A DNA stretch of 64,000 nt, from NCBI RefSeq assembly GCF_022045235.1, contig NW_027266343.1, positions 22,010,001-22,074,000 of the forward strand. Reading direction: 5' to 3'. The notes below the pieces were generated by a model, which was given only the letters and a program-made list of their open reading frames with translations, was not told the DNA's origin and made no database searches. This document shows, piece after piece, positions 4,643-61,271 of this stretch (its first letter is position 1; the number at the start of each line of letters is the position of its first letter). Both the position numbers and the translations under genes were made by a program. The DNA comes from Haliotis cracherodii (lineage: Eukaryota).

Positions 4643-4727
4643 CGTTAGAGCTGATGGTGAGATGGCCCAGCAAGACTTGAACAGCGTCACATCTATGGAG
4701 ACGGATCTTGATGATGAAAGGGAACTT
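4643..4727 (+). CDS. EVC2-like exon (VRADGEMAQQDLNSVTSMETDLDDEREL)
   Basis: tttcag| ... |gtacgt, phase 2->0, joins next exon in frame. Confidence 0.7.
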
Positions 4728-7700
4728 GTACGTCAGTTTGCTATTCACACTTTTCATCAGCTGCACAAAGACCACCTACATGACACACACATAAAGTAAA
4801 CAAAGGGGATCATTAGTCAGTATCTATATCCCATTATTTCCTGTAGTAAAGTCATACATAATACACAATACTTTTGAAAGAAACTAGTCAAACACGGTAG
4901 TAGTGAAGTTGACGGGACCTACATAAATACTTCGAGTTATCCGAGGTTTGACATAAACTGGTTTGGTTTGATTCTTTTTTAACTCTGCACTCAGCATTAT
5001 TCCAGCTATATGACGGAGGTCTGTAAATAATCGAGTCTTGACCAGACAATCCAGTGATTAACATCATGAACATCTATCCACGAAGTAGGGATACAATGAC
5101 ATGCATCAACCAAGTCAGTGAGCCTGACCACCCGATTCCGTAAGTCGCCTCTTACGACAAGCATAGTCTTTTACGGCAAGCATGGGTTGCTAAAGACCCA
5201 TTCCACCCCGAATCTTCACGGGTCTCGACACAACTGAAAATCATATATAGTATAAAGAAGGAATGCACAGGTTTTTACTTTGAGACAACCGTAAGTTTGA
5301 CACATCAAAGTTCGACACAACAGTGTTTGACTATAATAGACTTATAGGATGTTTTGGTTTGTGATGGTATATCCTTAATAAGTGCATGTCCTGTAGTTTG
5401 TCATGTCATATTTAACATTTCCCTGTTATCATGTTGTATAAGAAACTTGAGCAATGACATTTGATCTAACTCTGTGAACCAAGGCTGGGCAAATATTAGA
5501 GTTGACCAGTCATGCAGCCCAGAAATGCTTCACAAACGTTCAACTCACACAAGGCATAAATCTTCCGTGGCTGTCTTGATAATGTTTCCATTTGAGGGTC
5601 TCACTACAAATGACGTGGCTGACATGGCTCGAATATAATCACACAATATGACAGTTACTTTTTAACTCTTATCATTTACCTATTTACAGTTTAGAACCTT
5701 TATTTAAGAAGGTGTGTTTAGTCTAATGATGGATGAATTCAAGACATTCAAGACAACTATTTGTGACATGGACAAACTGACAACTAGTGTTACACACATC
5801 TCATTGAGAATACTATTCTGTGTGGAAGTGCTCTAATTGTCAGCAATTGAATCATTATGATTATTGATTGCAATCCTCCTCATGAATGATAATTTACTAT
5901 GACTTGCAGCTGCTGCTTCGCTGCCTGGACGGCCTGATGAAGACGTTGGTGGTGAAGAAGGACATCACAGAGGACTACTACAGGACGTTCATGAAGAGGA
6001 CAGGTGAAGACATCACAGACATCAGGAAAATTGTGCACACAGAGCGTCAAGAGGCGGAGGAGGTAACTCGGTTGGCTTCAGTGCTGAACTATAGATATCT
6101 CCACTTAGGATGTTGCTCAACAAGTTTCATTTCCATGACTCCTGCTCACATCTTTAATTGTAGCAGCTATTGCCATGCACATGCCTCAAATTAAGAAACT
6201 GAAGTTGAACATTGCTGAGCTCTTAAATGTCACCATGTTCTGTAATGTGACTGAGCTCTTGTATGGCATTATCTTCTGAATAACTGCTGAGCTCTTTCAT
6301 ATCTATGGTTATGCTGCTGTGCTCTTGCACGGCACTATTTACTGTAGTGTTGCTGAGCTCTTACATGACACTTCCCAGGTATCTGCTGTAGTGTTGCTGA
6401 GCTCTTACATGTCACTTCCCAGGTATCTGCTGTAGTGTTGCTGAGCTCTTACATGACACTTCCCAGGTATCTGCTGTAGTGTTGCTGAGCTCTTACATGA
6501 CACTTCCCAGGTATCTGCTGTAGTGTTGTTGAACTCTTACATGTCACTTCCCAGGTATCTGCTGTAGTGTTGTTGAACTCTTACATGACACTTCCCAGGT
6601 ATCTGCTGTAGTGTTGTTGAACTCTTACATGACACTTCCCAGGTATCTGCTGTAGTGTTGTTGAACTCTTACATGTCACTTCCCAGGTATCTGCTGTAGT
6701 ATTGCTGAGCTCTTACATGACACTTCCCAGGTATCTGCTGTAGTGTTGTTGAACTCTTACATGACACTTCCCAGGTATCTGCTGTAGTGTTGTTGAACTC
6801 TTACATGACACTTCCCAGGTATCTGCTGTAGTGTTGCTGAGCTCTTACATGTCACTTCCCAGGTATCTGCTGTAGTGTTGTTGAACTCTTACATGTCACT
6901 TCCCAGGTATCTGCTGTAGTATTGTTGAACTCTTACATGACACTTCCCAGGTATCTGCTGTAGTGTTGCTGAGCTCTTACATGACACTTCCCAGGTATCT
7001 GCTGTAGTGTTGTTGAACTCTTACATGACACTTCCCAGGTATCTGCTGTAGTGTTGTTGAACTCTTACATGACACTTCCCAGGTATCTGCTGTAGTGTTG
7101 TTGAACTCTTACATGTCACTTCCCAGGTATCTGCTGTAGTGTTGTTGAACTCTTACATGTCACTTCCCAGGTATCTGCTGTAGTGTTGTTGAACTCTTAC
7201 ATGTCACTTCCCAGGTATCTGCTGTAGTGTTGTTGAACACTTACATGTCACTATCACCTAAAATGTTGCAGGAGGCCAAGAACAACAGCAAGCTCAGCAC
7301 GGACCCCCAAGCACTCGACTCTCACCTTGAGAACCTTCAGACACAAGCCAGTAGCAAACAGGTATACAGACAGTTTAGATGGGCATGGATGTTGTTGGTT
7401 GGTTGGTTTGTTGTTTAACGCCGCACTCAGCAATATTCCATCTATATGACGGCGGTCTGTAAATAATCGAGTCTGGACCAGACAATCCAGTAATTAATAT
7501 CATGAGCATCGATCCACGCAATTGGGATTGATGACATGCATCAACCAAGTCAGCGAACCTGACCACCCGATCCTGTTAGTCACCTTTTACGACAAGCATA
7601 GTCCCCTTTTGCGGCAAGCATGGGTTGCTGAAGACCTATTCTACCCCAATCTCATTCAAATCAGACCTTAGTTCTCACTACTGCTAAACAAAGATCTGAA

Positions 7701-10700
7701 GACATCCCATTAGGGGTCACGTCAGAACGACCTTTCATCCGACCAATCAGTGTGTCACTTACCAGATTATGAAAGTGACAGTCGGAATGTGATTTCTAAT
7801 CATGCAATCTCGAAAACTTTAACATGGTCTATTCCGAACGATAGTTACTGGTTTAACGACTGAATACTTACAATCCAGACCATCTATTAGCCATTCCAGA
7901 ATGTTTGTTTGTTCAGGTTTCAAATTTGTAATGGAGAATTTGTCAAAATATGTTTCGAAGTGTAGTCGCCAATTTGAAATTTGTGCCGTAAAGCTGGAAA
8001 AAGCTGCCTTCTGATTGGTCATTCCATTGGTCGGTCAAAGTTCCCGCAAGGTTGGTCTGACGTGACCCGTCATGGGATGTCCTCAGATCTTTGTTTAGCG
8101 GTAGGTAGCAAGAACTAAGATCTGATTTTAATGAGATTGATTCTACCCCAGAATCTTCACGGGTCTGGGCATGGATGTGTACAAGTGGACATGTACATGT
8201 GTTACTTGTAGACTGCAACGTGTGATGATCACCTGACCTTTCTGAACAAGTAGTTAAAGGCTTTTTTAAAACAATCACATACATGAATCAAATGTTTACC
8301 AGTTGTCTTTACAGACAGATTAATACATAATACTGTCTATTTCGACATGGAGTATTAATGGTTACATATAACACAAGTACACACTGATAACTGTCTTTGT
8401 TCAGAACCGACTGCAGAGAGAACAGAGAGAGAAGATGAGACAAGATCTCATACGGTCGTCTAGAATGTCGGAAGCTGAGGTAATTTAGATGTCCGCTACT
8501 TTGTTTGAAGACCACCCAGTACAGATAATATTTTGAGCAATGGAGTATTTACTAGTTTGGGGAATTTGTTAAAATTTCATTATCGATCACTGGTTTCACA
8601 AAACCAATCGATTATCCATCATCAATCGATAATGAGTTCAGTGTTCAGAATTCAGATACCTGGTACTTCCCTGACTTATTAAAGCAAATGACATATTCAG
8701 GAACTGTTGTTTGATTTGTTAATGTCTTATGTGATGATCAGTTAACATAAACATGTCCATAACAAGTAGTCAGTTTGTCCATTATTCACTTCAGTGGTGT
8801 ACATGTATCATGTGTTGCCTGCATTCCATAAGTAAATACAGATCAGTAAAGGAATGCCTTAACGCAAGCACACAAGGCTGCATTATTATATTGTTGTTGT
8901 TCTTTCATGCATTCTTGTACACAAACTTTTCAACAGTGCATGGATAATGGTGATTTATTTTGTGTAGACTGTATTCGGCTTTCAATGTAACTGTCCCAAA
9001 TATGTTTGTGCGAGTGTTTTGATCTATGGCTTTTCCTATGAATGCTACATGGACATCAGATGTTCATTACCTAATTGTGGCCAGGTATTAGATGAGGCCT
9101 CCTTTGTTTTCCCCTTGAGGGGTAAGGTTAAAAGAAATGTCATACTGGTACTTTTCTTCGGTGCTATAGATATATGACATTGATGTTGTCCAGGTGGAAG
9201 CGCTGATGGAGAAGCTGATGGGGCAGATGGGAGCACTGGAAGAGAAGATTGGTGCAGAGCAAGCCAGGCAGAGAAGGGTAAGCATACGTCTCTCTCAACA
9301 TATTTTGGCAATGCCGTAGCAGATATACAGCATATATGGAAAGTCAGGTCATTTAAATATTCACTTATATATCTATGAAATTTGTTCCCTTGTGACATGA
9401 TGAGTTTGCTGACTCTCCCAACAAGACATATACAACCCAGATGTCCTTTGTGTGTTGTAGGCCCTGCAGGAGCGGCTGGCCAAGCGGCGACAAGTGTTGG
9501 AGTACAACAACATGCAGGCTGACAACCAGAACCAGGATATCAACACCCAGGTCACAGTGCTAGCCGACATCCTCACCGGCCTTGTAACTGACAAGAAACT
9601 GGCAGACAAGCAGCAAGAGGAATTACTGCAACAGTACCGAGAGGATGTAGACAATGTTAGGGCACACTACAATAAAGGTAACACCCTTCAGTCATCAGGG
9701 CACACTATCTTTCAAATCTCTGTTCATAACTTACCGTTTATGTCTTTCTCTCAGCTGCATTCTGTGCAAGGCACTTTGTGCACTTGACTGCGATAATTGA
9801 CTATTGACTTGGAATTGTGTTTTGTGGTCACTGCGGGCATACTTACAAACCTAAATGAGGTCATACAAGAATCGATTTCTACAATGGGATTCCGAATTAA
9901 TATTGACGCTTAATATCTCATTTAGATTGAGAACTTTTAAAGCTTTTGTTTTTCTTAAAATTATAAAGAAAATGCTTAAACATTACCATGTGTTTTGAAC
10001 TGATATATAACAGATGGATAACAAACTGTGCTCAACTTGGACCTTTATTGGCTATGCTGAAAATATAAGATTTCTTGTATCTCCGAAACTGCTTTGCCAA
10101 ATGTAGTTAATTCTGTAGTGAACTAGTTTGATTGTGTTGTAGAGGCAGTACGTCAGCAAGAAAGTCTGGCTGAGAAGCTACAACAACGACGACAAAGACG
10201 CATGCACAAGCTGGCCGAGAAACAAACAAAGGAGAGGGCAACCTTTGTCCACACATCTGACAAGGGGGTGTCAGCTACAGAGTTTATACAGGTAGCCAGT
10301 CCAGCTGATGCCATATTCACAAGTATGTCTCTCCATAATATAAATGTCTCCACAGGAATAGGAGGCTCTGAGTGATAGATGGAAGATGTATGTATACCCT
10401 CCTGCATAAACAGCAAGTATAAAGACAAGGAAAGAAATGCATAAGTACATATTTTATATTTATCCTGCATTACTCCTTAATGCATTTATTGCTTACTTTA
10501 TGACAGAAACAGAGCTGTGCGATGGTCTAGGCTGAAGGAAAAAGTTGTTCCATACAAGTGTGAAGTCTGAAGCCCGACCCAGCACAGCTACCACGTGACC
10601 CATGGAAATGATGACATCACATATCTTCAAATTCCTTCTTGTCACCGGACAGACATGTGTCCACTTTTGGTCCTCAACATTTGGCTTTAATTTTGTGGAT

Positions 10701-13700
10701 TGCGCTTTGCTTCCATGTAAAATTTCTTCTGTGACGGGTGGAATATATATTTATATAATTATTATGCTTTTGATATATGTAATGTGTAATGATATATATG
10801 AAATTCATGTGAAGAGACTGTTGTATTTTTCCTTATTGTGGTTCCATCCACCATCTGGATTTGAATACTTGTCTCTCTTCTATAGAATTCGAGGCAGTAG
10901 GTTCATTTTCGTTTTCTGGCTAGGTATTTATATTATAATTACCTATAGCAGCTAGTTGGCTTTTCAAGTGTTTTATGTTTGTCTTTTGATACAATAACCT
11001 ATAATTTTTAAACTTATCATATCTCACTCTGTACATCTCATACTTCTTCTTCTGCCCCTTGTGTGGAAACGTCCCAAAACAAAGTTACCAGCTTCTAAGC
11101 TCATTTTGCCCATACACCCATTGCATCACCATGACGACCACCTCCAGCAATCAGAGCACACACACGAATCTCATGCAGCCTGCTGGACATGACACCTGAC
11201 ACCCTCTGCCTCATCATTCTCATTCTCCTCCCCTCCCTGTGGAGACGTGTTATATTTTTGAGAGAATATTTAGGCCTTTACTTGCATCAAAATGGGCAAA
11301 GATCAACCAAAATGTCTGCGATAATTCTTCATCGGTGGATCTGCACAAATTATGTTGTGACTGTCAGGGGTTCTGCAAACCAGGTTTCCGTTGTACAGAA
11401 TGTTCCCATCTTTCCAAAGAGACGTTTGCAGAATATCTTAGGAAATGTCAGAAAAGGAACATTGATCGCAGATCTAAATCTAAAGGGACAGAACACGAAC
11501 CTTCCTTGTCAAAGGAACCCAAACATACGACTTAGGCTAGCGTCTATCCTCTTGAGTTGCATCCTAACGGTCGACATTCACAGGATAGATCGACATCGAG
11601 CCTTCAGGGTCGACATTCTAAGGAATGCACTTACCTCAAGTCTCTGTTCGCGGGATCGATTGTCCAAGAGTGGACATTCTAAAGATCGATACGCCAAGGG
11701 TCATTCTCCTCAACAACGATCATCACGAGAACGGACTTTGACACTGAAGCAATCCTCCAATGATGTGACCACAACCATTCCGACTCCACAGATTGTCTAC
11801 ACTCTATGGATTGATCCTATGATTATGACCACAGCCGTTCCCGTTCTACCGAACGTCATTGTCACCTCGATCCGATTGTGCTCCTCGGACTTTGACTCTC
11901 AACGTCATCCCTATTGACACTCATCTCGACATTATCGATACGAGATGGACTTTGACTGGGATCGACATCTATCTACATCCCAGCGATACCAGCCTATGTG
12001 ACACTATCCTTACCCCACACTGGATCGATATGGGGATCATCGATATTGGCCCTCCCCCGAATACTCATTCACGTTCCGAGTGGCCTGCTCATATGCTTCC
12101 AGACCAGCAATCACCCGACAAGTTGCACTCAACGGTCATGACGCTTCCCTCGCAACCTCCTGTGACGGACCCTTCCACCAGTACGGTTCCTCAAGTGACT
12201 TATCCCTTACCACCTTCATAGGATCATAGAGATCAGACCACACTTTCAGTTTCACAGATTGGATCTCAATTACAGTCCTTATTGGCGACTTTCTCAGCAA
12301 CGCACAGAACAGTCAGGAATAACACCTAGGGATGCTACAACCACGACTTAGGCACAGACGACTCCGGGTACTGCGGTTAGAGACTGGGTCGATAACACGC
12401 CAACTTCTCCCGATGCTAACCCTGAAAGCCAGGCTTCACCTCCATCATCTCGCAGTTGGGCCCAGGTTGACCCTTCTCTGATTCTTCCCTGGACCGCAGA
12501 CTCACTCAACCTATCTGAGGATTACCTCCTTGCAGGGTTTGCGATGTCAACTAACACAGCTTCTCCCATCATGTTACCTCCAGCAGTCACCATGACACAC
12601 CTTGGAGCTGGATGTTAACATTGCCACCATTGCCTCGAAGTGATCCTCTTCTACATCAGTTATTGATGACAAGGAACTGGTACATCTGGATATCACAATC
12701 AGAAGGATCCTACCTTTATTGTCCACCATATTATCGGCGACATGCAAGAAGTATTTCCGTGGCCCAGGCTAAGACATTAGAGGAGGACTACAGAGGGACC
12801 ATGAATTTAATCCAAAGCAAATTTCAGGACATCATGGATCTTATCACACATCAATTGGGATCACTTACTGCGCTCAGGCGTAGAGGTCTAGTCAAGTACT
12901 GTCCTTGGGAAGAACATCATAAAGTCAGACTCTTCCAAGTGCCTTGGTCAACTCCCTACTTATCTGATCAGAATCCAAGATGTTTGTACAGGTAGTCAAT
13001 GAGGATACTCATCTCCAAGTGTCAGTAGACCTTCTTTGATAGGCATTTGCAGTGTTAGAACTACACCGAAACATCGCTCTTAATTGTATTAAAGAAGTTG
13101 TTCATCCATAAATTTTATCCTTCATCAGTCTGATGTCTTATTCTTAAGACATCAGAGGCAACAACTGGAGGACCAGTAGAGACAGGACTGTTTTATGTCC
13201 CCAGTTCAAACCATCCCAACAAGATCTCTGCAACGTCATTAGTGGGAAGACAGGCTCTTTTTGTGGCAGAGGACGAGCCTAAAACGGCTCTTCTCTGAGA
13301 TCTGTCACCTTCTCCTCCACCAAGGACTCTGGAGAGTCCCCCAAGAGGGGCAATGTCTCCTTCAAGTGGCTCCGCCTGCCTCCGGGACTTCCGCCTCCAG
13401 TTGTACCCATTACTTTCACTCCAGTAGGCGGAACACTAGGTTGATTCGTAGCCAACTGGACCATCCTGGACGACCACTTCATGTCCCAGATCCTTCGAGA
13501 CTGACTGCCACTCAGAGGAGTCTCTCCAACAATGTCCACTCCACTCCAGACGGTGTATGCGGCCAAGCAGTTGACAACACAACAGGTCACAATAGGTACG
13601 TTGATATCCAAATATACCCCAGAGTCTTTAGGCCCCAGTCCCAGAACCCCAGGGTTCTACTTGCCAATATTTTTGGTTGCGAAAAATGACTGCAAGAAAT

Positions 13701-16700
13701 TTCGTATGATTTTCAACATGAAGCTTTTTGCATGATGTCTGTCGTTCTCCTTTGCACCATCATTCGACAAGGGGACTACATGGTCAGGCTGGATCTACAA
13801 GACGCTTACCTTCACGTAACCATCCATCGAGAGCACCGCCATTACCTCCGATTTATTTTCCAAGGTCGTCACTACCAATGAAAGGTGCTCCCATCTGGAA
13901 TTTCTTTGGCCCAGTAGCTTTTTACCCACCTTACAAAGCCCATCATGAAGTTTCTTCACGTCAGCGGGATTGTCTTTGAGTCATTCATCGATGATTGCAT
14001 CCTGGCCGGAATGTCTTAGTCAAATATCTCGCCTTCCCGCAGAGATTACTTCATCATCTCGGTTGGCTAGTCAACACAGAAAAGTAGAAAAACACACCCT
14101 CTCAGCAACTGCAGTTCATCAGAGCTCTTTTCGACACCGATCTCGGGAAGCTGTTTGTTCTTCCGGACAGGTAGAAGAAGATACAATGACTTGTGTCGTT
14201 AGCACTCAGGCAGTCTCTTCATCTTCGACAATGACAATTCCGGACAGGATTTGAGCAAGTAATGCCGATTGGCGCAGATGACATGCCATAGGGTTCCTTT
14301 GACACTTTTTGTCTTATGAGGGTTTATCTATATTGAGGATTACATCTGAAGTTATGCCCACCGCCGTTCCATCAGATACAGATGCATTAAGGAGTAATGT
14401 TTGTTACTCTTGTATGACTGCATTACTACGTCTAAGGGACTCCGTATTGCAGACCTGCCTCCTCACTATATCTTCAGACAAAACTATGTGTGACAAGCAG
14501 TAATATGAAGATATGTGACATCACCATTTCCGTTGGATATGTGGTAGCTGTGTTAGGTCAGGCTTCAGACTTCACAATTGTATGAAACAACTTTTTTCTT
14601 CACACAGGTCTATTTCTGTCATTAGGTAAGCAGTAGGTGCATTAAGGTGTAATGCAGGATAAGTATACAAATAAAAAAAATACTTAGATTTTACTAATGC
14701 TCAAACTAGTCATTTATCCTCTTCATATTCTGCACTGCAAACTAGGTGGCATGTCAGTATTTTTGCCCAGACCATAAAATGAAACAATTGTTTGTGTGTT
14801 GAGTATTAAAATCAACATTAGAGACCGTTTCCTGTGTCCGGAAGCACGGGTGTCCCCGTCATCTAAGGCCATGCAGTTTGCTGTGTCCCTTGGGCATGCC
14901 AAAAACCTGGTTCGCCCTGATTATGTTTCTAGGTTTTTCAGCACCATACCGGTGCTTGTCAGTTTCACCAAATTGATAAACGCCTGAGACATGTATCACT
15001 TCAAGCTTTCCTCCCTCATCAAGCTGACACGCTGTGATATGACTGGAATAACTGTTCAAAGCGGCGTCAAAAACAACTCATTCTTTTTGTGTCTTATTTC
15101 TGTATTTAACAAACTTGGTAAAGTGATAGCAACATAAGATTATGGCTAAGATTAAGATACGTAACAAATGAATGTAAGAACCTCATTCAACCATTGCATA
15201 TTTCAGTATCCAGTAATCTATCTGATAACTTTATAACTAAATAATCAGATGTGACTTCTTCTTGACAATTGTTATTCAGTTTCATTGTGTAATGAGTACA
15301 AATTCAATCCATGTCAATAATTAGTATTTTTCATCAGATATATGTTCATTAGATCATGGATTTAAGTAGGTTTCCACTGCATGTACCTCGTAGATATGAA
15401 ACATTTCTATATAGCAGCTTCTGTTTTCATGTTTGTCCAGCTTCTAATGCCTATCAAAGACTAACCACCATTCCGACAGTTAGGTTCTGAATCAAGATTG
15501 TACTGGTCATTGGTTCAGTCACTGACATTCACCACAGAGAGAAACTACATAAAGCAATTAATTAACAAAATCAACTAGCTATGCAGTGTTTCTAGTTATA
15601 TAGAAAACTGTGTGTCTTCTTGACTTAATTTTGTCTGTTGGTTATGTAAGGAGGATACTCAGTGTACTTGAAATCAAGATCAATATTTATGTTTCTATGA
15701 CCAGTTATTTAGACGACGTTGTGCATGAATTCTGATAGTCTTTTAGGTGTAAATTGAAGTCCGAGGAGCCAACCTGTAGACTGAGATATGATGTGCACAC
15801 AACAGCAGAGACGGCTAATGTTTATACTGATGCAAGTATGTCTGTACATACAGGGTTACCATAAACTGATGTGTCACCAACACACGGAGAGGGAAGAAGT
15901 TTGTGCTGAGCTGGACCAGTCAGACATTCAGGACATGGACAAGGTGACCAAGGTGAGGTGAAGGAGCACTGTGGCATTGTGGCAAGACTTCTGACAATAC
16001 AGCAAGTGGCACTTGGCATTTCCTTGGAGATGTTATGATTAGCCGATGATGTTGGGAGTGTGTCAGAAAAAAAGAATCTGGCAATGCTGACTCAGGCCCT
16101 CCTATATATTGGATTAAGAAGCATTGAATGCGTTTAGATTGAAGGCATATTGGTAGCATAGCTTTCGTATTGGAACCGAATGCATTTATTATGGGAACAA
16201 AAAGAAAAACTGTTGGATTTGACAGTGGCCATTAGCGGAATATGTGTACAACCGCTGTGGGAAACTCGATCAAATGTAGCGGAATTACTTCAGCTGCATC
16301 CGTCAAAAGCCAATCGTAGTCTATTGACAATGCCTTTTCAGGAAACACAGTGTGCAAGAAATGGTGGCGATAAACAAATCACCGACAAACAAAGTAATTT
16401 CTTTTGGTTAGTCTGACTCAAAGTTTTGACAATAAAACATAACATCCATGGTATTGAGCAACTAGTATTCATATGCACCAGAATTTGTTATCAATAGTGG
16501 GAGGCTTGAATTCTGGTATCTGCAATCTTGCTTATTGTGTGGTAGCCAAAATACACACATCGGGACCTGTTAATGGTATATATCAATAAAATACATATAA
16601 ATTAAGATTATTGTTTAAGTGCCAGTCAGCCACAGACGAATCCCTTGCTGTTGATGTTGACTGACAGAATTTTTTATTAGCACTGTTATATCAACAATTA

Positions 16701-19700
16701 TTGGGCAAATACTACATCTTGCTCTAAGACGTTAACGGTGAATGAAATTATGGGTGAAGCAATTTATCTAGCTCTATGACGGATAAGCTTTCCATTCGAC
16801 TCCATCAAAATACATTGATAATGCATACAAAATTTTTTTTTAATGAAAATGAATAATCTGTATCAGAGGGGAATTATAATTTACATTCAATGCGCATTAT
16901 CTTCTTACTAAGAATTACATTCTTTGGAAACAACTGTTGACACTTCCCATTTTCTCTTCTCAGCTACTGTTAGCCATGTTTGGCTGTGTGGTGATTCCAA
17001 TGAGAACCGCTGTTTTGACGATAGGTACTGCATTGGAAACTATTCCTTCGCATTTGGTAGCTATACACACAATGTTTCTTACATTAATTCCGATAATGCT
17101 TCTTTTCAATCAAAAAGATAGGAGGACTTGTGACTGAATCAAGAAATTAGGGGAATGGAAAATGAGTTACTTGTGATGATGAGGGTTATGACTCATTTCA
17201 TATGAGTTTTAACATTATTTTAGTGTTGAGAAGCTAAAGTTATGGATAGTATTCTCTTAGTTGTCCCAGAGTGGTGTGGGGATCCCGGGACTCACTGCTG
17301 ACCTGAAAGGTTCTCTCTGTAGTTGGGAAGTTAGGATACACTGAAAGTGACAGAATTAAGTGTTAACCTAGAAATTGTATGAGACTCTTCAACATGCCAT
17401 CTAGTTATGTGTTGTGTGTATATATATAAGTAAGGCCACAGATACACATCTGAGGACTTGTTGTAACTCAGAAAACTCTCTTTCTTCCCCAAATGGACTT
17501 GACCAATAAATCTAGCTTATGATTTGATGAGCTTCATGAAAGTTAAGAGTTGATAACAAGTACTACCAGATTTTTGGTATTTTGAGTTTATAATTAACTA
17601 TTCATGCACCACTGGCATCATTTATTGGGAACATTCATTTTTATGGGTTTTTCTGCCCATAATATTTCCTGTTATTGCATATTACATGTAGTGACCTTTT
17701 ATGATTTTCATTTGATTTATTATTTTATTGTATGGATACCAATAGCTTTGGTCCTTTTTTTGTTTTGTTTAGGAATTAAACAAATAATGTACGAGAGATA
17801 CATGGTAAAGTATAGTGTTTGTGTTGCAGGGACTGAGAGAGCAAGAGCTGTCTGAAGTGGAGGAGAAGTTAGGTACACAGATGGCAGAGGTGGGTCGGCA
17901 GGGGAACATGGGCAGCACCGACGTCAACCGCCTTCTCAGGCAACACCGTCAGCAGATGGACAACTACAACGGTCAGTGCATCATACCATCATTCACTGCA
18001 AACAGGCAGTCATTATGATTTTTACCATTTTGAGGTGTCAGTTATTTATATCTTGACTGTTTATACTAAGCCATGTGATGTTGATTGATCAGCTGACTGT
18101 TGACTGTTTCAGGTCGTAAACAGAAGGAGAGGCAGGCAATGCTGGCCCGCCTCCAGGAGCGCTTGGCATATAGACTGCAGGTCAGTTCAGTACAACACTG
18201 TGTTAAATGACACTTGTGTGATGGAGGTTAAGTGTCTAGGTTATATGACACTGGTGTGTTGCAGGTTATGTGTCTAGGTGATATAACACTTGTGTGTTGC
18301 AGGTTATGTGTCTAGGTAATATGACACTGGTGTGTTGCAGGTTGTGTGTCTAGGTTATATGACACTGGTGTGTTGCAGGTTGTGTGTCTAGGTTATATGA
18401 CACTGGTGTGTTGCAAGTTATGTGTCTAGGTTATATGACACTGGTGTGTTGCAGGTTATGTGTGTCTAGGTTATATGACACTGGTGTGTTCCAGGTTGTG
18501 TGTCTAGGTTATATGACACTGGTGTGTTGCAGGTTGTGTCTAGGTTATATGACACTGGTGTGTTGCAGGTGGTGTGTCTAAGTTATATGACACTGGTGTG
18601 TTGCAGGTTGTGTGTCTAGGTTATATGACACTGGTGTATTGCAGGTTGTGTGTCTAGGTTATTTGACACTGGTGTGTTGCAGGTTGTGTGTCTAGGTTAT
18701 ATGACACTGGTGTGTTGCAGGTTGTGTGTCTAGGTGATATAACACTGGTGTGTTGCAGGTTATGTGTCTAGGTTATATGACACTGGTGTGTTGCAGGTTG
18801 TGTGTATAGGTTATATGACACTGGTGTGTTGCAGGTTGTGTGTCTAGGTTATATGACACTGGTGTGTTGCAGGTTGTGTGTCTAGGTGATATAACACTGG
18901 TGTGTTGCAGGTTATGTGTCTAGGTTATATGACACTGATGTGTTGCAGGTTGTGTGTATAGGTTATATGACACTGGTGTGTTGCAGGTTGTGTGTCTAGG
19001 TTATATGACACTGGTGTGTTGCAGGTTATGTGTAGGTTATATGACACTGGTGTGTTGCACGTTGTGTGTCTAGGTGATATAACACTTGTGTGTTGCAGGT
19101 TATGTGTGTCTAGGTTATATGACACTGGTGTGTTGCAGGTTATGTGTCTAGGTTATATGACACTGGTGTGTTACAGGTTGTGTGTCTAGGTTATATGACA
19201 CTGGTGTGTTGCAGGTTGTGTGTATAGGTGATATAACACTGATGTGTTGCACGTTGTGTGTCTAGGTTATATGACACTGGTGTGTTGCAGGTGGTGTGTG
19301 TCTAGGTTATATGACACTGGTGTGTTGCAGGTTGTGTGTCTAGGTTATATGACACTGGTGTGTTGCAGGTGATGTGTGTCTAGGTTATATGACACTGGTG
19401 TGTTGCAGGTGGTGTGTGTCTAGGTTATATGACACTGGTGTGTTGCAGGTGGTGTGTGCCTAGGTTATATGACACTGGTGTGTTGCAGGTTGTGTGTCTA
19501 GGTTATATGACACTGGTGTGTTGCAGGTGGTGTGTGTCTAGGTTATATGACACTGGTGTGTTGCAGGTTGTGTGTCTAGGTTATATGACACTGGTGTGTT
19601 GCAGGTGGTGTGTCTAGGTTATATGACACTGGTGTGTTGCAGGTGGTGTGTGTCTAGGTTATATGACACTGGTGTGTTGCAGGTTGTGTGTCTAGGTTAT

Positions 19701-53427: not shown

Positions 53428-53600
53428 ATCCCTGTGGGGATTCCAGGTTAGAATAGGTCCCCAGCAACATTTGCTGGTCATAAGAGATGACCAAATAGAT
53501 CGGGTGGTCAGGCTCGATGACTTGGCTGAAAGCATGTCATCGTACCCCGACGGCATGGATCTTTGTTCACAATGTCAATTACATGATTGACTCGATCATT
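53428..53600 (+). mobile_element. Degenerate Nin-domain-like SINE
   Basis: ttagaataggtccccagcaac...ggtggtcaggctcgatgacttgg. Confidence 0.6.
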
Positions 53601-53765
53601 TACACATTTCACAAAAAGATGACTAATCTACTTACAAGGTAGAATGCTGAATCATTGCATGAATGGTATGGCTATAAACAGATTCAAGTTTGTTCAAGGC
53701 TTCATGATTGGCTGTCAGCCTAGGTATTATAGACGATGTGGCAAAGACTTTGTCTAGCGCCTTTT

Positions 53766-55163
53766 TTATCCCCCTGGTATATAATGCTGGGGGATATAGC
53801 GATCAGCCAGTCCGTCTGTCCGTCCGTCTGTCCGATCGTAATCATTTCCTTTTCCGGGGCAGAATTTGAAAATCATTCAGTGTATTTGATCGAAACTTGG
53901 CAAATCTATCAGGCACATACTGAAGTGGTGCCTTTTGATATTATGGGATTTTTCTATTTTATATTTTTTAAAAAATTTTCTGGAATGAAGTTGGACATAG
54001 ACTCAATTGGGGATGGGGTCAGTTTCCGGGGCAGAATTCGAAAACCATTCAGTGTATTTGATCGAAATTTGGCAAAGCTATCAGTGATATTTTGGGATTT
54101 TTCTAATTTTTATTTTTTTTAATTTTCATGGAATGAAGTTGGACATAGACTCAATTGGGGATGGAGTTTGTTTCCGGGGCAGAATTCGAAAACCATTCAG
54201 TGTATTTGATCGAAACTTCGGCAAAGATATCAGGCACATACTGAAGTGGTGCCTTTTGATATTTTGGGATTTTTCTAATTTTTATTTTTTATAATTTTTC
54301 TGGAATGAAGTTGGACATAGACTCAATTGGGGATGGGGTTCGTTTCCGGGGCAGAATTCGAAAACCATTCAGTGTATTTGATCGAAATTTGGCAAATCTA
54401 TCAGTGATATTTTGGGATTTTTCTAATTTATTTTTTTTTATTTTCATGGAATAAAGTTGGACATAGACTCAATTGGGGATGGAGTTTGTTTCCGGGGCAG
54501 AATTCGAAAACCATTCAGTGTATTTGATCGAAACTTCGGCAAAGATATCAGGCACATACTGAAGTGGTGCCTTTTGATATTTTGGGATTTTTCTAATTTT
54601 TATTTTTTTAATTTTTTCTGGAATGAAGTTGGACATAGACTCAATTGGGGATGGGGTTCGTTTCCGGGGCAGAATTCGAAAACCATTCAGTGTATTTGAT
54701 CGAAACTTGGCAAATCTATCAGGCACATACTGAAGTGGTGCCTTTTGATATTTTGGGATTTTTCTCATTTTTATTTTTTTAAATTTTTATGGAATGAAGT
54801 TGGACATAGACTCCATTGGGGAACGAATTCGTTTCCGGGGCAGAATTCGAAAACCATTCAGTGTATTTGATCGAAACTTGGCAAATCTATCAGGCACATA
54901 CTGAAGTGGTGCCTTTTGATATTTTGGGATTTTTCTCATTTTTATTTTTTTAAATTTTTATGGAATGAAGTTGGACATAGACTCCATTGGGGAACGAGTT
55001 CGTTTCCGGGCCAGAATTTGAAAACCATTCAGTGGGTAAACAATGTATGCTTCTTAAAGAACATTCAACTGTTGACTCATTACATACAGTATTGCACATT
55101 TACTAGTGGTTACTTTACAGACAGCTGCCGGGGGGATACGTCATCTTTCTGATGACTCTTGTT
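53766..55163 (+). mobile_element. Helentron-associated MITE (HINE) with ~7 tandem 150-170-bp units
   Basis: ttatccccctgg...gggggata, (gtcc/gtct)n, tandem units, 3' ggggggata plus hairpin gtcatc-tttct-gatgac. Confidence 0.88.
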
Positions 55164-55886: not shown

Positions 55887-58800
55887 TCACAAGATTAATG
55901 TGTTAACTACATGATGGTTGTCCAACACCTGAAAACAGACCTCCCTGAAACTGACGCCATTATGACACTCATTCCAGGTAGAAATACAAACACAATTGTA
56001 CTTAATGTTGAAGAAGCTCTTTCTCCAGCTGCAAGCCAAAGGCAGCTGAAACAATTCAATGTATAGATGCGAAGACATATTTCAACAGCAACATTGATGA
56101 TGGAGAAAACTACTTATGTAACAAGTGTGGTGAATGTTGGCACTATTCATGCTATTCCTTTGTACACAAACTTCATGACATAGTAATAGAGCCACAGGTG
56201 TTTTAACTTACCTGAATGTTTCTGGAATATTTGAAACATTAGATCATGAATAAATCAACATACATAAGTTGTCATAAATTCTGCCATGTTAAAATCAAAT
56301 GAACAAAAAATTACTGGTAATATGGTTTGACTTAGGTCTGCTGGTGAAAAAGAATATATTCATGAAAATGATGTTAATTAACATGATGTTATTTTGACAT
56401 TACTACAAGTGGTATAAAGCTGAATAAACTAGTATGTTCCCCCAACATCAGCAAGTAACAATTTATAGGGGAGGTGTCCAGTTACTGCTTATGTAAGTGC
56501 ATACATAATACTTAATCTGTGAACACAATATAACTCATGTATGAAAACCCTTGTGAAATGATCCTTCAAACTTAGTCACACATGGCCCAGTATTGTTATA
56601 TTGGTGACAAGTTACTGTGCACTTGGTTGTGCCAGTCTTGGGCTTTTGTGCCTGAGGGTTTATGATATTTAAAACCCGAATAGGTGGCATAAGGTTTTTA
56701 AGTATGATAAAAACCAGAGGGGAAGTGTTTATCTATCTTATAAACCAATTAAATAAACTGAAAACAACATTTATCAACATTGTTATCTTTTAAACGTACT
56801 TTCCATGAACCTTGGGAAATGAACATAAAATATGTGCAGCTGGCATAGGGTACCAGGACACATCTCTTCCTCAGTGGGGGAAATAGGCGATGCTGTGTTC
56901 ACCAGGACATATCTCTCACCAGTGTGGGAAACAATCAATGCTGTGATCACCAGGACATATCTCTCACCAGTGTGGGAAATAGACGATGCTGTGTTCACCA
57001 GGACATATCTCTCAGCAGTGTTGGAAACAATCAATGCTGTGTTCACCAGGACATATCTCTCACCAGCGTGGGAAATAGACGATGCTGTGTTCACCAAGAC
57101 ATATCTCTCACCAGTGTGTGAAATAGAAGATGCTGTGTTCACCAGGACATATCTCTCACCAGTGTGGGAAATAGACGATGCTGTGTTCACCAGGACATAT
57201 CTCTCACCCAGTGTGGGAAATAGACGATGCTGTGTTCACCAGGACATATATCTCAGCAGTGTTGGAAACAATCAATGCTGTGATCACCAGGACATATCTC
57301 TCACCAGTGTGGGAAATAGACGATGCTGTGTTCACCAGGACATATCTCTTCTCCAGAGTGAGAAATAGACGATGCTGTGTTCACCAGGACATATCTCTCA
57401 CCCTGTGTGGGAAATAGACGATGCTGTGTTCACCAGGACATATCTCTCAGCAGTGTTGGAAACAATCAATGCTGTGTTCACCAGGACATATCTCTCACCA
57501 GTGTGTGAAATAGAAGATGCTGTGTTCACCAAGACATATCTCTCACCAGTGTGTGAAACAGAAGATGCTGTGTTCACCAGGACATATCTCTCCCCCAGTG
57601 TGGGAAATAGACGATGCTGTGTTCACCAGGACATATCTCTCACCAGAGTGGGAAATAGACGATGCTGTGTTCACCAAGACATATCTCTCACCAGTGTGTG
57701 AAATAGAAGATGCTGTGTTCACCAGGACATATCTCTCCCCCATTGTGGGAAATAGACGATGCTGTGTTCACCAGGACATATCTCTCACCAGTGTGGGAAA
57801 TAGATGATGCTTAGTTCACCAGGACATATCTCTCACCAGTGTGGGAAATAGACGATGCTGTGTTCACCAGGACATATCTCTCAGCAGTTTTGGAAACAGT
57901 CATTGCTGTGATCACAGGGACATATCTCTCAGCAGTGTGGGAAATAGGCGATGCTGTGTTCACCAGGACATATCTCTCACCAGTGTGGGAAATAGACGAT
58001 GCTGTGTTCACCAGGACATATCTCTCACCAGTGTGGGAAATAGGCGATGCTGTGTTCACCAGGACATATCTCTCCCCCAGTGTGGGAAATAGACGATGCT
58101 GTGTTCACCAGGACATATCTCTCACCCTGTGTGGGAAATAGACGATGCTGTGTTCACCAGGACATATCTCTCAGCAGTTTTGGAAACAATCAATGCTGTG
58201 TTCACCTGGACATATCTCTCACCAGTGTGGGAAATAGACGATGCTGTGTTCACCAGGACATATCTCTCACCAGTGTGGGAAATAGACAATGCTGTGTTCA
58301 CCAGGACATACCTCTCCTCAGTGATAAGGATTATCAAGGGAATAAAAAACCGGTGGATCACACGTAGTTCTCGTAAATTGCAATCATGATACGATCGCCT
58401 GTTCATGGTCTGATGTTTGTCCAAACGAATTCGAATGGTGTAGAGTTCACCTCCTTCATCTGCGCCGACAGAACGTAATGGACTGATGTTTAGACGTGGT
58501 TAGGGACACTGCTGGATTACTACACATCATTTTGGAATTATGATGTCTTTTTTGTTTAACCTTGATGTCAAATAAAGGTGATTATGTTGAAAGAAACATA
58601 CGTCAAGAGTGGTCACAAAAAGACGCATGATCCTACCGGTTAGATATGAATAAACGTTATGGAAGGAAGAAACCAAATGGCTCTACTGAAGGAGTTATTA
58701 GTAACAGACAGTTTACAAACAAAATACACAACAATGATAAAATGTTGGTCCTTCACCCAACTATTAATGTACGAGGGGATATCAAAAAGTTTTCAATGCG

Positions 58801-60128
58801 CTACACCTGATGTACATGAATGTCTTAGCTACTGATGCTTTGTAGAAACATATTGCTGGCTGCAATTATTTTGTCACAACACTTCGTGGGAGAGACCTAC
58901 CCCTAGTGAATTGGCAAAATGGACAAATCTGAGTACAGAGCGGTGATAAAGTTCCTTGTCCAAGAGGGTCAATCTGCCAAACAGGTGGAAGAGTGATTGA
59001 CTGCAGTTTATGAAGTGTCTTCCCCATCGTCTGCAACTATCAAACGGTGGGTGAAGGAATTTCAGCGTGGCAGAGAGAGCATAGAAGATGACGCCCGGTC
59101 CGGACGGCCATAAACCAGTACCAGCCCTGAAAACATTGACACTGTACACAAACTAGTGATGGAAAACCGCCGTATTACTCTTCATGAGCTAGAAGAAACA
59201 ACAGGCCTATCATATGGATCCATACATAATATAATTCATGGCAAACTCCACATGTCCAAAGTGTGTGCCAGTTGGGTCCCAAGAATGCTTACAGATGACA
59301 TGAAGCTATCAAGGGTCACCATCAGTGGAGCCTTGCTAACTCGGTACAACGCCAACCCAGATGATTTTCATTTTAGGATTGTAACCAGTGATGAAACCTG
59401 GGTTTATCATTATGATCCGGAGAGCAAACAGGAGTCGATGGAATGGAAACACGCCACTTCAAAGAAGTTCAACGCCACCAGATCCACCAAGAAGGTTATG
59501 ATGACATCTTCTGGGACAGCAAAGGAGTGATTCACATCGACTACCTGCCCCATGACACCACAATGAATGGGGAGTAGTACGTCAAGTTATTGAAGCAGGT
59601 GCGCCAATCCATCAAGGTGAAATGCCGTGGAAAAATCCGTCGTGGGATTCTGCTACACCATGACAACGCACCAGTCCACACGATCCGTGTTGCAATGGCA
59701 GCTGTGCAAGAATGTGGCTACGAACTCCTCCCTCACCCACCCTATTCTCCAGACCTAGCCCCCAGTGACTTCCACCTCTTCCCAGGCTGAAAAGAAACAC
59801 CTCCGGGGCCGGAGATTTGAAGATGACGATGAGCTAACTGCTGCTGTGGAAGGTTGGTTAGGGGACCAGAATGTTGACTTCTACCGATCGGTCATCAGTG
59901 ACTGGCAAACTAGGTGGAGCAAGTGTGTGGAGTTGGGAGGGGACTATGTTGAAATATAAAGTAGTAACAATCCAATTCTTTTACCTTTTCTGTGTGAGGC
60001 TCAAAACTTTTTGATATCCCCTCGCACTTACCGCCAGGTAAGGCTGTTAAAACATGACAGTAATCAATGGTATCATGGAGGTAATCAGCCTCACTGCTTG
60101 TCCTCTCCTGGTGACTAGGTCCCGCCAT
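55887..60128 (-). CDS. Candidate small spliced gene, 98 aa, unknown product
   Basis: Exons 60131-60032 (cacag|AGGATGG...G|gtaagt), 58459-58312 (cgcag|...AG|gtatgt), 56221-56212 (ttccag|AAACATTCAG|gtaagt) and 55928-55887 (tttcag|...TGA). Phases 1, 2, 0 join into one ORF. No homology recognised; the last two exons are the least certain. Confidence 0.4.
56850..58325. repeat. 48-bp minisatellite (~30 copies)
   Basis: Unit ccagtgtgggaaatagacgatgctgtgttcaccaggacatatctctca. Confidence 0.97.
58772..60024 (+). mobile_element. Mariner (DD34D) transposon, full length, transposase inactivated
   Basis: TIRs CGAGGGGATATCAAAAAGTTT at both ends; TA left flank, CA right flank; WVPRML, DETWVYHYDPESKQESMEW, HDNAPVH, YSPDLAPSDFHLF; stops and frameshifts. 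Confidence 0.95.
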
Positions 60129-61271
60129 CCTCTGTGGGTAATCAACCCCAGTGACAAGTTCCCATCATCCTCTGGGGGTAATCAACCCTAGTGACAAGTT
60201 CCAATCATCCTCTGGGAGTAATCAACCCCATTGACTATTTCCCATCATCCTCTGGGGGTAATCAACCTCAGTGACAAGTTCCAACCATCCCCTGGGGGTA
60301 ATCAACCCCAGTGACAAGTTCCAACCATCCCCTGGGGGTAATCAACCCCAATGACTAGTTTCTACCATGCTCTTGAGGTAATCAACCCCAGTGACTAGTT
60401 TCTACCATGCTCTGGAGGTAATCAACCCAAATGACTAGTTTCTACCATGCTCTGGGGGTAATCAACCCCAGTGACTAGTTTCTACCACGCTCTGGAGGTA
60501 ATCAACCCCAGTGACTAGTTTCTACCATGCTCTGGAGGTAATCAACCCAATGACTAGTTTCTACCATGCTCTGTTGGTTATCAACCCCAATGACTAGTTT
60601 CTACCATACTCTGGAGGTAATCAACCCCAATGACTAGTTTCTACGATTCTCTGGAGGTTATCAACCCCAGTGAACAGTTTCTACCATGCTCTGGAGGTAA
60701 TCAACCCCAGTGACTAGTTTCTACCATGCTCTGGAGGTAATCAACCCCAATGACTAGTTTCTACCATGCTCTTGGCGTAATCAACCCTAATGACTAGTTT
60801 CTACCATGCTCTGGAGGTAATCAACCCAATGACTAGTTTCTACCATGCTCTGTTGGTTATCAACCCCAATGACTTGTTTCTACCATACTCTGGAGGTAAT
60901 CAACCCCAATGACTAGTTTCTACGATTCTCTGGAGGTTATCAACCCCAGTGAACAGTTTCTACCATGCTCTGGAGGTAATCAACCCCAGTGACTAGTTTC
61001 TACCATGCTCTGGAGGTAATCAACCCCAATGACTAGTTTCTACCATGCTCTGGACGTAATCAACCCTAATGACTAGTTCCTACCATGCTCTGGAGGAAAT
61101 CAACCCTAGTGACTTGTTTCTACCATGATCTTGGGGTAATCAACCCCAGTGACTTGTTTCTACCATGCTCTAGGGGTAATCAACCCCAATGACTAGTTTC
61201 TACCATGCTCTGGAGGTTATCAAACCCAGTGACTAGTTTCTACCATGCTCTGGAGGTAATCAACCCCAGTG
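60120..61271. repeat. 40-bp minisatellite (~29 copies)
   Basis: Unit ggaggtaatcaacccca(g/a)tgactagtttctaccatgctct. Confidence 0.97.

What the first reader, a model, noticed from the sequence alone, without database searches (positions are those of the whole stretch)
6344..61271. All six long minisatellite families are anchored on splice sites: tandem amplification of intron-exon junctions
Seen: six sequence-unrelated arrays (44, 38, 45/42, 52, 48 and 40 bp units) each end at a splice site. Four are at acceptors of the EVC2-like gene (7271, 19912, 37135, 47620). Two are at a donor (58311) and an acceptor (60132) of a candidate - strand gene, so those two depend on that weaker gene model. In five arrays the unit clearly includes the splice position plus exon bases. 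The arrays always grow into the intron and leave the coding frame intact. Exons occupy under 5% of the window, so chance placement looks unlikely. Inference: either a mutational process tied to splice junctions (R-loops, co-transcriptional breaks, RNA-templated repair, or slippage seeded by exon/intron microhomology) or a splicing-based tolerance lets junction repeats expand. This would be an intron-growth mechanism that builds ladders of decoy splice sites. Single AGGT tandem duplication as a route to intron gain is known; I do not know of systematic 20-90-copy junction arrays being described, but I could not search the literature.
Basis: partly seen in the sequence, partly recalled or inferred. 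Interest (0 to 1): 0.9.

Follow-up and report, generated by a model that had tools for sequence, protein, structure and literature searches.

The report
Splice-junction "mirage" minisatellites in abalone gene
Three introns of an abalone cilia-type (EVC-like) gene are swollen by long head-to-tail copies of their own intron-end/exon-start junction. This repeat type is already known from lancelets ("mirages") and from human F7. The other three arrays in the claim are not shown to be built on splice sites.

Summary
All six arrays exist and are private to this locus. Three of them (38 bp x45 at 18202-19919, 45/42 bp x39 at 35480-37156, 52 bp x94 at 42748-47634) contain a real 3' splice site plus 7, 21 and 14 exon bases. 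The copy attached to the exon is the genuine one. Exon borders were fixed with Haliotis rubra and H. asinina orthologues.

Array 1 (44 bp) ends 19 bp before an acceptor and does not include it. The two minus-strand arrays rest on an unsupported gene model. No RNA contig covers the proposed exons, no protein family matches, and a sister species carries a net 11-bp deletion inside one of them.

The kind is not new. "Mirage" minisatellites were described in amphioxus (PMC3087553, PMC3902484), and a donor-spanning VNTR is known in human F7 (PMC1557585). This scan has already noted the phenomenon 28 times elsewhere in this genome.

As a sample not chosen for arrays, I examined two dynein heavy-chain genes. 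Three of their 17 arrays span a junction and three more abut one (P = 0.029 and 0.0018 against random seeding). This suggests junctions are favoured. No mechanism is shown.

Verdict: new member of a known kind, moderate interest.

The parts
18202..19919 (+). Array 2. 38-bp unit x44.8: 25 intron bases ending TTGCAG, about 7 exon bases (GTKGTGT), then 6 more. It fills intron 18181-19912 except its first 21 bp.
   Evidence: TRF; register; 41 of 44 copies keep AG; intron make-up.
19913..20022 (+). Exon 11 (VVSDQEQEEE...), attached to the last copy of array 2.
   Evidence: tblastn of P0002 residues 494-530, 84% identity; sequence.
18113..18180 (+). Exon 10 (GRKQKERQAMLARLQERLAYRLQ). Its donor GT at 18181 lies 21 bp before the first, degenerate unit of array 2.
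35480..37156 (+). Array 3b. About 39 copies: 45-bp units distally, 42-bp units next to the exon. The unit is the intron end (..TGTGTTACAG) plus 21 exon bases (ACGTGCTAGTGGTGTACTGAT). It fills intron 35452-37135 except about 26-28 bp.
   Evidence: TRF; the repeat finder; 33 of 39 copies keep AG.
35383..35451 (+). Its donor lies just before array 3b.
   Evidence: tblastn of P0002 residues 730-756; sequence.
37136..37286 (+). Exon 18 (RTSGVLMHILMEQRHQKAM...). Its first 21 bases are repeated in every unit of array 3. The residues are kept in a 46%-identical orthologue (FASHVLTKSLLEQRH).
42748..47634 (+). Array 4. 52-bp unit x94: 31-38 intron bases ending CCCACAG or CCCACAA, plus 14 exon bases (AGACTGGTGTTGGT). 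It takes 4.9 kb of the 9.1-kb intron 38478-47620.
   Evidence: TRF; 32 copies CAG and 62 CAA.
47621..47734 (+). Exon 20 ((E)TGVGDEKAKKLAKELR...), attached to the last copy of array 4.
6342..7252 (+). Array 1. 44-bp unit x20.7, with degenerate units back to about 6190. It ends 19 bp before acceptor 7271 and does not contain it. It sits beside a junction but is not shown to be derived from it.
7272..7361 (+). Exon 3 (EAKNNSKLSTDPQALDSHLENLQTQASSKQ).
   Evidence: tblastn 87% identity; sequence.
33507..33897 (+). Array 3a. 8.7 copies of the 45-bp variant of array 3, embedded in a copy of the dispersed 171-bp family. It starts 259 bp right of the N gap and lies 1.5 kb upstream of exon 17, so it is not at a splice site.
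33086..33248 (.). Assembly gap (N), inside intron 16. Nothing was filled in.
   Evidence: orthologue residues are contiguous across exons 16 and 17.
56852..58323 (-). Array 5. 48-bp unit x30.5 with a 145-bp higher-order period. Only the terminal copy reads ..GAGAG|GTATGT; 24 others read AT. The proposed donor at 58311 depends on an unsupported exon.
   Evidence: no RNA contig, and a net -11 bp in the sister species inside the proposed exon.
60111..61278 (-). Array 6. 40-bp unit x29.3. The terminal copy reads ..CCCACAG|AGGATGGCGGGACCTAGTCAC. The proposed acceptor at 60132 depends on an unsupported exon.
   Evidence: no RNA contig; no Pfam hit.
4584..48870 (+). Host gene: 21 exons encoding residues about 93-928 of an EVC-like coiled-coil membrane protein. 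Orthologues are XP_046570216.1 (H. rubra) and XP_067657325.1 (H. asinina). The first exons lie upstream of the window.

Best explanation
Arrays 2, 3b and 4 are 'mirage' minisatellites.

Origin (inferred): a 38-52-bp segment spanning a 3' splice site (intron end plus the first 7-21 exon bases) was duplicated in tandem. It then expanded to about 40-94 copies by slippage or unequal exchange, with homogenisation inside the array.

Why they look as they do: only expansions that leave the exon-attached terminal copy and the reading frame untouched survive. So the arrays appear to grow into the intron, inflating introns that were once tens of bases long to 1.7-9 kb.

Consequence: most extra copies are complete look-alike acceptors. 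The genuine site must be picked by context (the exon body and its downstream donor), not by the local signal. That step is also inferred.

Background: this genome is extremely rich in minisatellites, about 7-17% of the sequence I sampled. Many arrays are therefore born everywhere, and junction-spanning ones are tolerated. A moderate excess at and near junctions is suggested but its cause is unknown.

Array 1 is a near-junction intronic array. Arrays 5 and 6 are ordinary local minisatellites until an exon is shown there.
For: Shown:
- The arrays are real and locus-specific.
- Acceptors and exon starts match orthologue proteins to the residue.
- Unit homology runs 7, 21 and 14 bp into the exon and then stops.
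- The exon residues encoded inside the units are kept in a 46%-identical orthologue, so the exon came first.
- Introns 18181-19912 and 35452-37135 hold only about 21 and 26 non-array bases.
- Variant structure typical of real arrays (45 to 42 bp shift, irregular CAG/CAA pattern) is.
- Seed simulation within this gene gives P about 1e-4.

Independent replicate: in two dynein heavy-chain genes, three junction-spanning arrays (one acceptor, two donors, one carrying 21 exon bases in 14 perfect copies) and three abutting ones among 17 arrays. P = 0.029 and 0.0018.

Literature: mirages in amphioxus with normal splicing (PMC3087553, PMC3902484); F7 IVS7 VNTR (PMC1557585).
Against: - No RNA reads were laid on the three confirmed junctions. 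Use of the terminal acceptor rests on RefSeq models of two other Haliotis species and on RNA-like runs holding an exon-sized share of the stretch.
- The arrays were not checked against long reads or other individuals.
- The within-gene P value is biased because the window was flagged for this pattern.
- The unbiased sample is small (17 arrays). Its exon map is incomplete, which would raise the null.
- 11 of those 17 arrays, and five or more large arrays just downstream of the window, are not near any detected exon.
Confidence: 0.85

Rival explanations
1. A mutational process tied to splice junctions seeds these arrays preferentially at exon-intron borders. Candidates are co-transcriptional breaks, R-loops, RNA-templated repair, or microhomology between the exon start and the intron. 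It concerns the cause of the excess and does not conflict with the arrays being mirages.
For: - Excess over random seeding in this gene and in two genes not chosen for arrays.
- Arrays that abut a junction without spanning it are also in excess: array 1, and the dynein arrays 7 and 24 bp after a donor and 12 bp before an acceptor.
- 28 earlier notes of the same thing in this genome (leads only).
Against: - No mechanistic signature was found.
- The units fold no better than shuffles.
- Most arrays lie away from exons, and overall minisatellite density is very high.
- One earlier follow-up (s1-834456) reported no preference.
- The sample is small and the exon map incomplete.
Confidence: 0.3
2. 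There is no junction preference. Minisatellites are born uniformly at a very high rate, junction-spanning ones are simply tolerated, and this window looks striking because it was selected from many.
For: - About 10 arrays per 100 kb in the unselected dynein loci.
- The null already predicts about 4% spanning and 4% near per array.
- Undetected exons would raise that null.
- The scan looked at hundreds of windows of this genome.
Against: 6 of 17 arrays spanning or within 25 bp, against about 8% expected (P = 0.0018). In this gene, 3 of 5 span an acceptor.
Confidence: 0.25
3. Arrays 5 and 6 are also mirage arrays, anchored on the donor and acceptor of a real minus-strand gene.
For: - The terminal copies carry GAGAG|GTATGT and CCCACAG|AGG.
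- The two open frames have compatible phases.
- GT occurs only in the exon-side copy of array 5.
- The arrays are locus-specific.
Against: - Three RNA-like runs cover only the mariner element between the proposed exons, not the exons themselves.
- A sister-species contig has indels of -7, -1, -4 and +1 at 58350-58372, inside the proposed exon. That is a frameshift.
- No Pfam hit.
- A splice-like acceptor can also be read on the plus strand at the same array end.
- The next 30 kb holds several large arrays with no evident coding frames.
Confidence: 0.15
4. The reverse direction: the exon starts were recruited from pre-existing intronic minisatellites (exonisation of the last unit).
For: Sequence identity between unit and exon start does not by itself give a direction.
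Against: The residues encoded by the shared bases are conserved in H. rubra, H. asinina and a 46%-identical orthologue, for example RASGVLM against FASHVLT, and the G of TETGVGDE.
Confidence: 0.03
5. The arrays are assembly artefacts.
For: One N gap lies in the window, and block 3a beside it sits in a duplicated context.
Against: - Irregular internal variants and higher-order periods.
- The array 5 unit has about 48 times the baseline depth in another species' DNA contigs.
- The same repeat type occurs in independent loci.
Confidence: 0.03

Closest known systems
'Mirage' minisatellites of amphioxus (Adh3, globins BflGb6/9, troponin C, PGBD5)
   Same: Tandem repeats whose unit spans an exon-intron boundary, at either the 3' or the 5' end of an exon. 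Many units keep AG/GT signals. The real junction is the terminal copy, and the coding sequence is untouched. Boundary copies are excluded from homogenisation (PMC3087553; PMC3902484).
   Different: - The host is a gastropod mollusc, not a cephalochordate.
- Copy numbers are far higher: 39-94 here against 3-6 for the globins.
- Two whole introns are built from the array.
- Several arrays occur in one gene.
- Normal splicing and length instability, shown in amphioxus, were not tested here.
Human F7 intron 7 37-bp VNTR
   Same: Its first element spans the exon 7-intron 7 boundary, so the real donor is followed by identical pseudo-donors that stay silent (PMC1557585). This is the same layout as dynein arrays cand2 and cand3, and as array 5 if its exon is real.
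   Different: - F7 is a donor-side array, and the genuine site is the first copy, chosen by 5'-to-3' scanning.
- The three confirmed arrays here are acceptor-side, and the genuine site is the last copy. That scanning rule does not explain them.
Intron gain by tandem duplication of an AGGT-containing exon segment (Rogers model; potato RdRp case PMC4974935)
   Same: Tandem duplication creates extra splice signals. Introns 18181-19912 and 35452-37135 consist almost wholly of repeat units.
   Different: The units contain intron-specific sequence (25 and 21-24 bases) that is not found in the flanking exons. Only TGCAG|GT.GTGT is shared with the exon 10/11 join. So these look like expansions of existing short introns, not new introns. 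Absence of the intron in relatives could not be tested.
Recursive splice sites (juxtaposed AG|GT in long introns, from general knowledge of Drosophila and vertebrate recursive splicing)
   Same: Units of array 2 (TTGCAG|GTTGTG) and array 1 (TTCCCAG|GTATCT) place an acceptor directly before a donor-like GT.
   Different: This is a sequence resemblance only, with no RNA evidence. Arrays 3 and 4 lack the GT.

Membership tests
Mirage minisatellite | Head-to-tail array of short units (tens of bases) | tested here: met
   TRF: periods 38-52 bp, 20-94 copies, 88-96% matches.
Mirage minisatellite | The unit spans an exon-intron boundary (intron end plus exon start, or exon end plus intron start) | tested here: met
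   Met for arrays 2, 3b and 4: AG plus 7, 21 and 14 exon bases, with borders fixed by orthologues. Not met for array 1, which ends 19 bp short. Inconclusive for arrays 5 and 6, whose exons are unsupported.
Mirage minisatellite | The genuine junction is the terminal copy and the reading frame is intact | tested here: met
   All orthologue residues are accounted for across exons 10/11, 17/18 and 19/20.
Mirage minisatellite | Normal splicing despite the look-alike sites | tested here: inconclusive
   RefSeq models of H. rubra and H. asinina use the terminal copy. RNA-like runs hold 0.14-0.15 of the words of 19900-23600, close to the exon share. No reads were laid on these junctions, because the single read-laying run went to the minus-strand model.
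Mirage minisatellite | Length polymorphism or instability between alleles | not tested
   No second haplotype or individual was examined. An intronic 27-bp minisatellite is polymorphic in H. discus hannai TSSK1-like (PMC6905558), but it was not described as junction-derived.
F7-type donor-spanning VNTR | The first repeat element spans the exon end and the 5' splice site, followed by identical pseudo-donors | tested here: inconclusive
   Array 5 has the layout, but its exon is unsupported and 24 of 25 copies read AT instead of GT. The feature is met outside the window at L022:6966-7646 (14 perfect copies) and L008:860-1351.
Intron gained by tandem duplication of exon sequence | The intron sequence is a rotated copy of the flanking exon sequence, and the intron is absent in relatives | tested here: not met
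   Units share only 12-13 bases with the exon 10/11 join. The rest is intron-specific.
   No Pfam family on P0002, P0024 or P0009, even at E up to 10. Atlas features put P0024 next to clusters carrying EVC_N and EVC_C (score 0.94). This is a lead pointing to EVC rather than EVC2.

The most novel reading that the evidence does not exclude
In abalone, exon-intron junctions are preferred birthplaces of minisatellites. In my small samples about 2-7% of junctions carry or touch one, which would mean thousands genome-wide. If so, a junction-linked mutational process, shared with or convergent to that of lancelets, is a major driver of intron growth. It would also provide a natural library of up to about 90-fold decoy splice-site ladders.
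Probability: 0.3. Interest if true: 0.7.

Novelty: new member of a known kind. Interest (0 to 1): 0.45.

Why it matters
- **Scope.** The phenomenon is not confined to lancelets and one human gene. In a mollusc it reaches dozens of copies, several arrays per gene, and introns made almost wholly of the repeat.
- **A natural splicing experiment.** For acceptor-side arrays, 30-40 intact look-alike 3' splice sites, each with a branch-point-like CTGAT and 21 identical exon bases, precede the genuine one. The 5'-to-3' scanning rule established for F7 donors cannot explain that choice, so these loci would test exon definition directly.
- **Annotation.** Such ladders invite wrong exon calls and spurious micro-exons.
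- **Intron growth.** If the excess at junctions holds genome-wide, it points to an unrecognised link between splice junctions and tandem duplication, and to a fast route of intron growth.

Tried and rejected
- **Pfam on single exon frames**: no hits.
- **The search for homologous proteins** with P0002: timed out.
- **Original amphioxus paper** (PMC117041): not held.
- **Read laying.** The tool turns away long repeats, so I did not send any array. I used the single call on 58250-60250 to test the minus-strand model. It gave no support for those exons. This is no proof of absence.
- **RNA hairpins hiding the decoys.** Units fold no better than shuffles, z from -2.2 to +2.7. Rejected.
- **TE-borne or dispersed origin of the six families.** Rejected: each is locus-specific, whereas the 171-bp family gives at least 1454 places.
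- **Intron-gain reading for array 2.** Only 12-13 bases are shared with the exon-exon join, so I did not adopt it.
- **Literature.** I found no report of junction minisatellites in molluscs in the held library.
- **Joined coding sequence.** None was built or searched. Exons were searched one by one by reference and mapped with orthologue proteins.
Full report
**Observation**

| Array | Position | Unit | Copies |
|---|---|---|---|
| 1 | 6342-7252 | 44 bp | 20.7 |
| 2 | 18202-19919 | 38 bp | 44.8 |
| 3a | 33507-33897 | 45 bp | 8.7 |
| 3b | 35480-37156 | 45/42 bp | 38.7 |
| 4 | 42748-47634 | 52 bp | 94 |
| 5 | 56852-58323 | 48 bp | 30.5 |
| 6 | 60111-61278 | 40 bp | 29.3 |

Searches of the window's own 1.18-Gb assembly find each of the six families only at this locus. 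Array 2 has weak 70-74% matches to other GT-rich arrays. The same search gives at least 1454 places for the 171/342-bp tandem family, which also forms arrays in the window at 40696, 51215 and 53851. So the six families were made locally and are not carried by a mobile element. 'All six long families' holds only if that seventh, dispersed family is set aside.

**The gap**

The N run at 33086-33248 lies in the 12-kb intron between exons 16 and 17. The orthologue's residues run on without loss from one exon to the next, so no coding sequence is missing as far as that model shows. The 259 bp to its right nearly duplicate 33920-34129. They end in array block 3a, which sits inside a copy of the dispersed 171-bp family. 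The placement of that block is therefore the least secure part of the picture.

**The host gene**

- One exon frame (9461-9784) searched against 1.8 billion representative proteins found P0002. This is XP_046570216.1 of Haliotis rubra, named 'trichohyalin-like', 928 aa and 82% identical over the exon.
- Its cluster mate P0024 is from H. asinina. P0009 is a 46%-identical orthologue.
- tblastn of P0002 on the window maps 21 exons from 4584 to 48870.
- The first exons lie upstream of the window.
- Pfam finds no family on any of the three proteins.
- The ESM Atlas places P0024 beside clusters carrying EVC_N and EVC_C, score 0.94. This is a lead towards EVC rather than EVC2.
- I never joined the exons into a model. 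They were searched one by one by reference.

**Which arrays are built on a splice site**

I read the last copies of each array in register with the junction.

- **Array 2.** Unit GTTATATAACACTGGTGTGTTGCAG|GTTGTGT.. against the real junction ..TTGCAG|GTGGTGTCAGACC. The AG and about 7 exon bases are in the unit.
- **Array 3b.** Unit ..TGTGTTACAG|ACGTGCTAGTGGTGTACTGAT against the real ..ACAG|ACGTACTAGTGGTGTACTGAT|GCAC. 21 exon bases are shared, 20 of 21 identical.
- **Array 4.** Unit ..TGCCCACA[A/G]|AGACTGGTGTTGGT against the real ..CCCACAG|AGACTGGTGTTGGT|GATGAG. 14 exon bases are shared.

The exon starts are fixed by the orthologues: RLQ|VVS[ED]Q, HGAG|R[AT]SGVLM, AA[VT]|(E)TGVGDE. The distant orthologue keeps FASHVL and the G of the third. 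The exon sequence is therefore older than the arrays, which rules out recruitment of exon starts from a repeat.

Array 1 ends at 7252, 19 bp before acceptor 7271. In register, only 8 of those 19 bases match the unit. It is a near-junction array, not a junction copy.

**Effect on the introns**

| Intron | Length | Non-array bases |
|---|---|---|
| 18181-19912 | 1732 bp | 21 |
| 35452-37135 | about 1682 bp | about 26 |
| 6063-7271 | about 1208 bp | about 300 (less, counting degenerate units from about 6190) |
| 38478-47620 | 9.1 kb | 4.3 kb (array takes 4.9 kb) |

So short ancestral introns have been inflated many-fold.

**Decoy sites**

| Array | Copies keeping AG |
|---|---|
| 2 | 41 of 44 |
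| 3b | 33 of 39 |
| 4 | 32 of 94 (CAG); 62 read CAA |

In array 3 each unit also carries a branch-point-like CTGAT about 22 nt upstream of its AG. It has the same 21 exon bases as the real site, so local sequence cannot mark the genuine acceptor. I infer that the exon body and its downstream donor do. Folding gives no sign that the decoys are hidden in structure.

**The minus-strand pair**

The sequence pattern is as described. The terminal copy of array 5 reads CACTGAGGAGAG|GTATGTCC while 24 others read ..AT... The terminal copy of array 6 reads CCCACAG|AGGATGGCGGGACCTAGTCAC. Every minisatellite ends in a partial unit, however, and AG or GT is easy to find there. A good acceptor can also be read on the plus strand at 58323.

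Because read laying turns away long repeats, I laid four runs on 58250-60250 only.

- The three RNA-like runs cover only the mariner-type element (58794-60023, 90-95% alike). They do not cover the proposed exons.
- A DNA contig of a sister species joins 58767 directly to 60022, so the element is absent there.
- That contig carries indels of -7, -1, -4 and +1 at 58350-58372, a frameshift inside the proposed exon.
- Pfam finds nothing on these frames.
- The 30 kb beyond the window holds five or more large arrays, for example 34 bp x240 (8.1 kb) and 34 bp x145, with no evident coding frames.

I rate the splice anchoring of arrays 5 and 6 at about 0.15.

**Chance**

I collapsed each array to one unit and seeded five units at random in the gene. 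Three or more span an acceptor with P about 1e-4, or any boundary with P about 6e-4. This figure is biased, because the window was reported for this very pattern.

For an unbiased sample I located dynein heavy-chain genes with PF03028 and fetched two 100-kb loci. They carry about 9 and 14 minisatellites per 100 kb. Exons were found by matching open frames between the two paralogues, giving 33 and 32 exons. Of 17 arrays in the mapped parts, three span a junction:

- L008:4117-4430(-): GTCCTGTGTTGTAG|A.., an acceptor, 5 copies.
- L008:860-1351(-): CTGAG|GTAGGTTGTCAC, a donor.
- L022:6966-7646(+): CACTGGCAGCCCATCCTGGAG|GTAGG, a donor with 21 exon bases in 14 perfect copies.

Three more arrays begin 7 or 24 bp after a donor, or end 12 bp before an acceptor. 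Random seeding predicts 3.9% spanning and 4.3% within 25 bp per array. That gives P = 0.029 for three or more spanning and P = 0.0018 for six or more spanning or near. Undetected exons would weaken these figures somewhat. The excess is thus suggested by independent data but not settled.

**What is known**

[quoted passage not shown] They have been reported for its globin, troponin C and PGBD5 genes, with normal splicing and length instability, and their mechanism of origin is called unclear (PMC3087553, PMC3902484). The human F7 intron 7 VNTR has its first element across the exon 7 boundary. Its pseudo-donors stay silent because the most upstream donor is chosen by 5'-to-3' scanning (PMC1557585). 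I found no mollusc report in the held library. A polymorphic 27-bp x62 intronic minisatellite is recorded in H. discus hannai without this interpretation.

This scan's own notes already hold 28 reports of the same thing on other pieces of this genome. They gave me the term 'mirage' and the F7 lead, both of which I checked in the papers.

**Verdict**

- The interpretation as junction amplification is right for those three.
- The claim of novelty is wrong in kind, but the scale and the animal group are new.
- A splice-linked mutational cause remains open.

Noticed in passing
window 58768-60021: A mariner/Tc1-type element (HTH plus DDE_3 frames on the plus strand) lies between arrays 5 and 6. A sister species' DNA contig joins 58767 to 60022, so the insertion is absent there. 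RNA-like contigs match it at only 90-95%, meaning that other copies are the transcribed ones.
   Followed up: partly
window 40696-41753, 51215-51826, 53851-55034; also L002-L003: A 171/342-bp tandem family forms arrays in an intron and in intergenic DNA. It is dispersed, with at least 1454 candidate places in the genome, many at 90-96% identity. It is not at splice sites.
   Followed up: partly
window 33249-34129: Block 3a of the array 3 family (8.7 units) is inserted within a copy of the 171-bp family, flanked by a perfect 100-nt duplicate (33408-33507 = 34030-34129). It lies right beside the N gap. How junction-derived units came to lie 1.5 kb upstream of exon 17 is unexplained. It could be an ectopic exchange or a misassembly.
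   Followed up: partly
L004-L006 (window end +1 to +30 kb): This domain is very rich in minisatellites: 34 bp x240 (8.1 kb), 34 bp x145 (4.9 kb), 59 bp x34, 25 bp x18.5 (unit starts GTAAGC), and 51-bp and 30-bp arrays. Together they make about 57% of 30 kb. No evident coding frames lie between them, and one array end abuts a SINE.
   Followed up: partly
L007-L026 (two dynein heavy-chain loci): About 10% and 7.5% of these genic 100-kb stretches are minisatellites with 11-110-bp units. Six of the 17 arrays in the mapped parts span or abut splice junctions.
   Followed up: yes
window 18202-19912 and 6342-7252: The units of arrays 2 and 1 place an acceptor directly before a donor-like GT (TTGCAG|GTTGTG; TTCCCAG|GTATCT), like recursive splice sites. 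Exon 10 also ends in CTGCAG, so use of a decoy would recreate a donor-like site. There is no RNA evidence.
   Followed up: no
window 11135-14251 (+) and 28555-31033 (-): Long open frames of retroelement type lie inside introns 7 and 16 of the host gene, including a 497-aa frame at 29543-31033 and an RT-like stretch near 13700-13980. SINE copies are scattered through many introns (for example 7400-7520 and 32880-33085).
   Followed up: no
window 42748-47634: In array 4 the CAG and CAA variants of the decoy acceptor are interspersed irregularly. The first three distal copies and the exon-attached copy are CAG. Two thirds of the copies therefore carry a disabled acceptor that has spread within the array.
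   Followed up: partly
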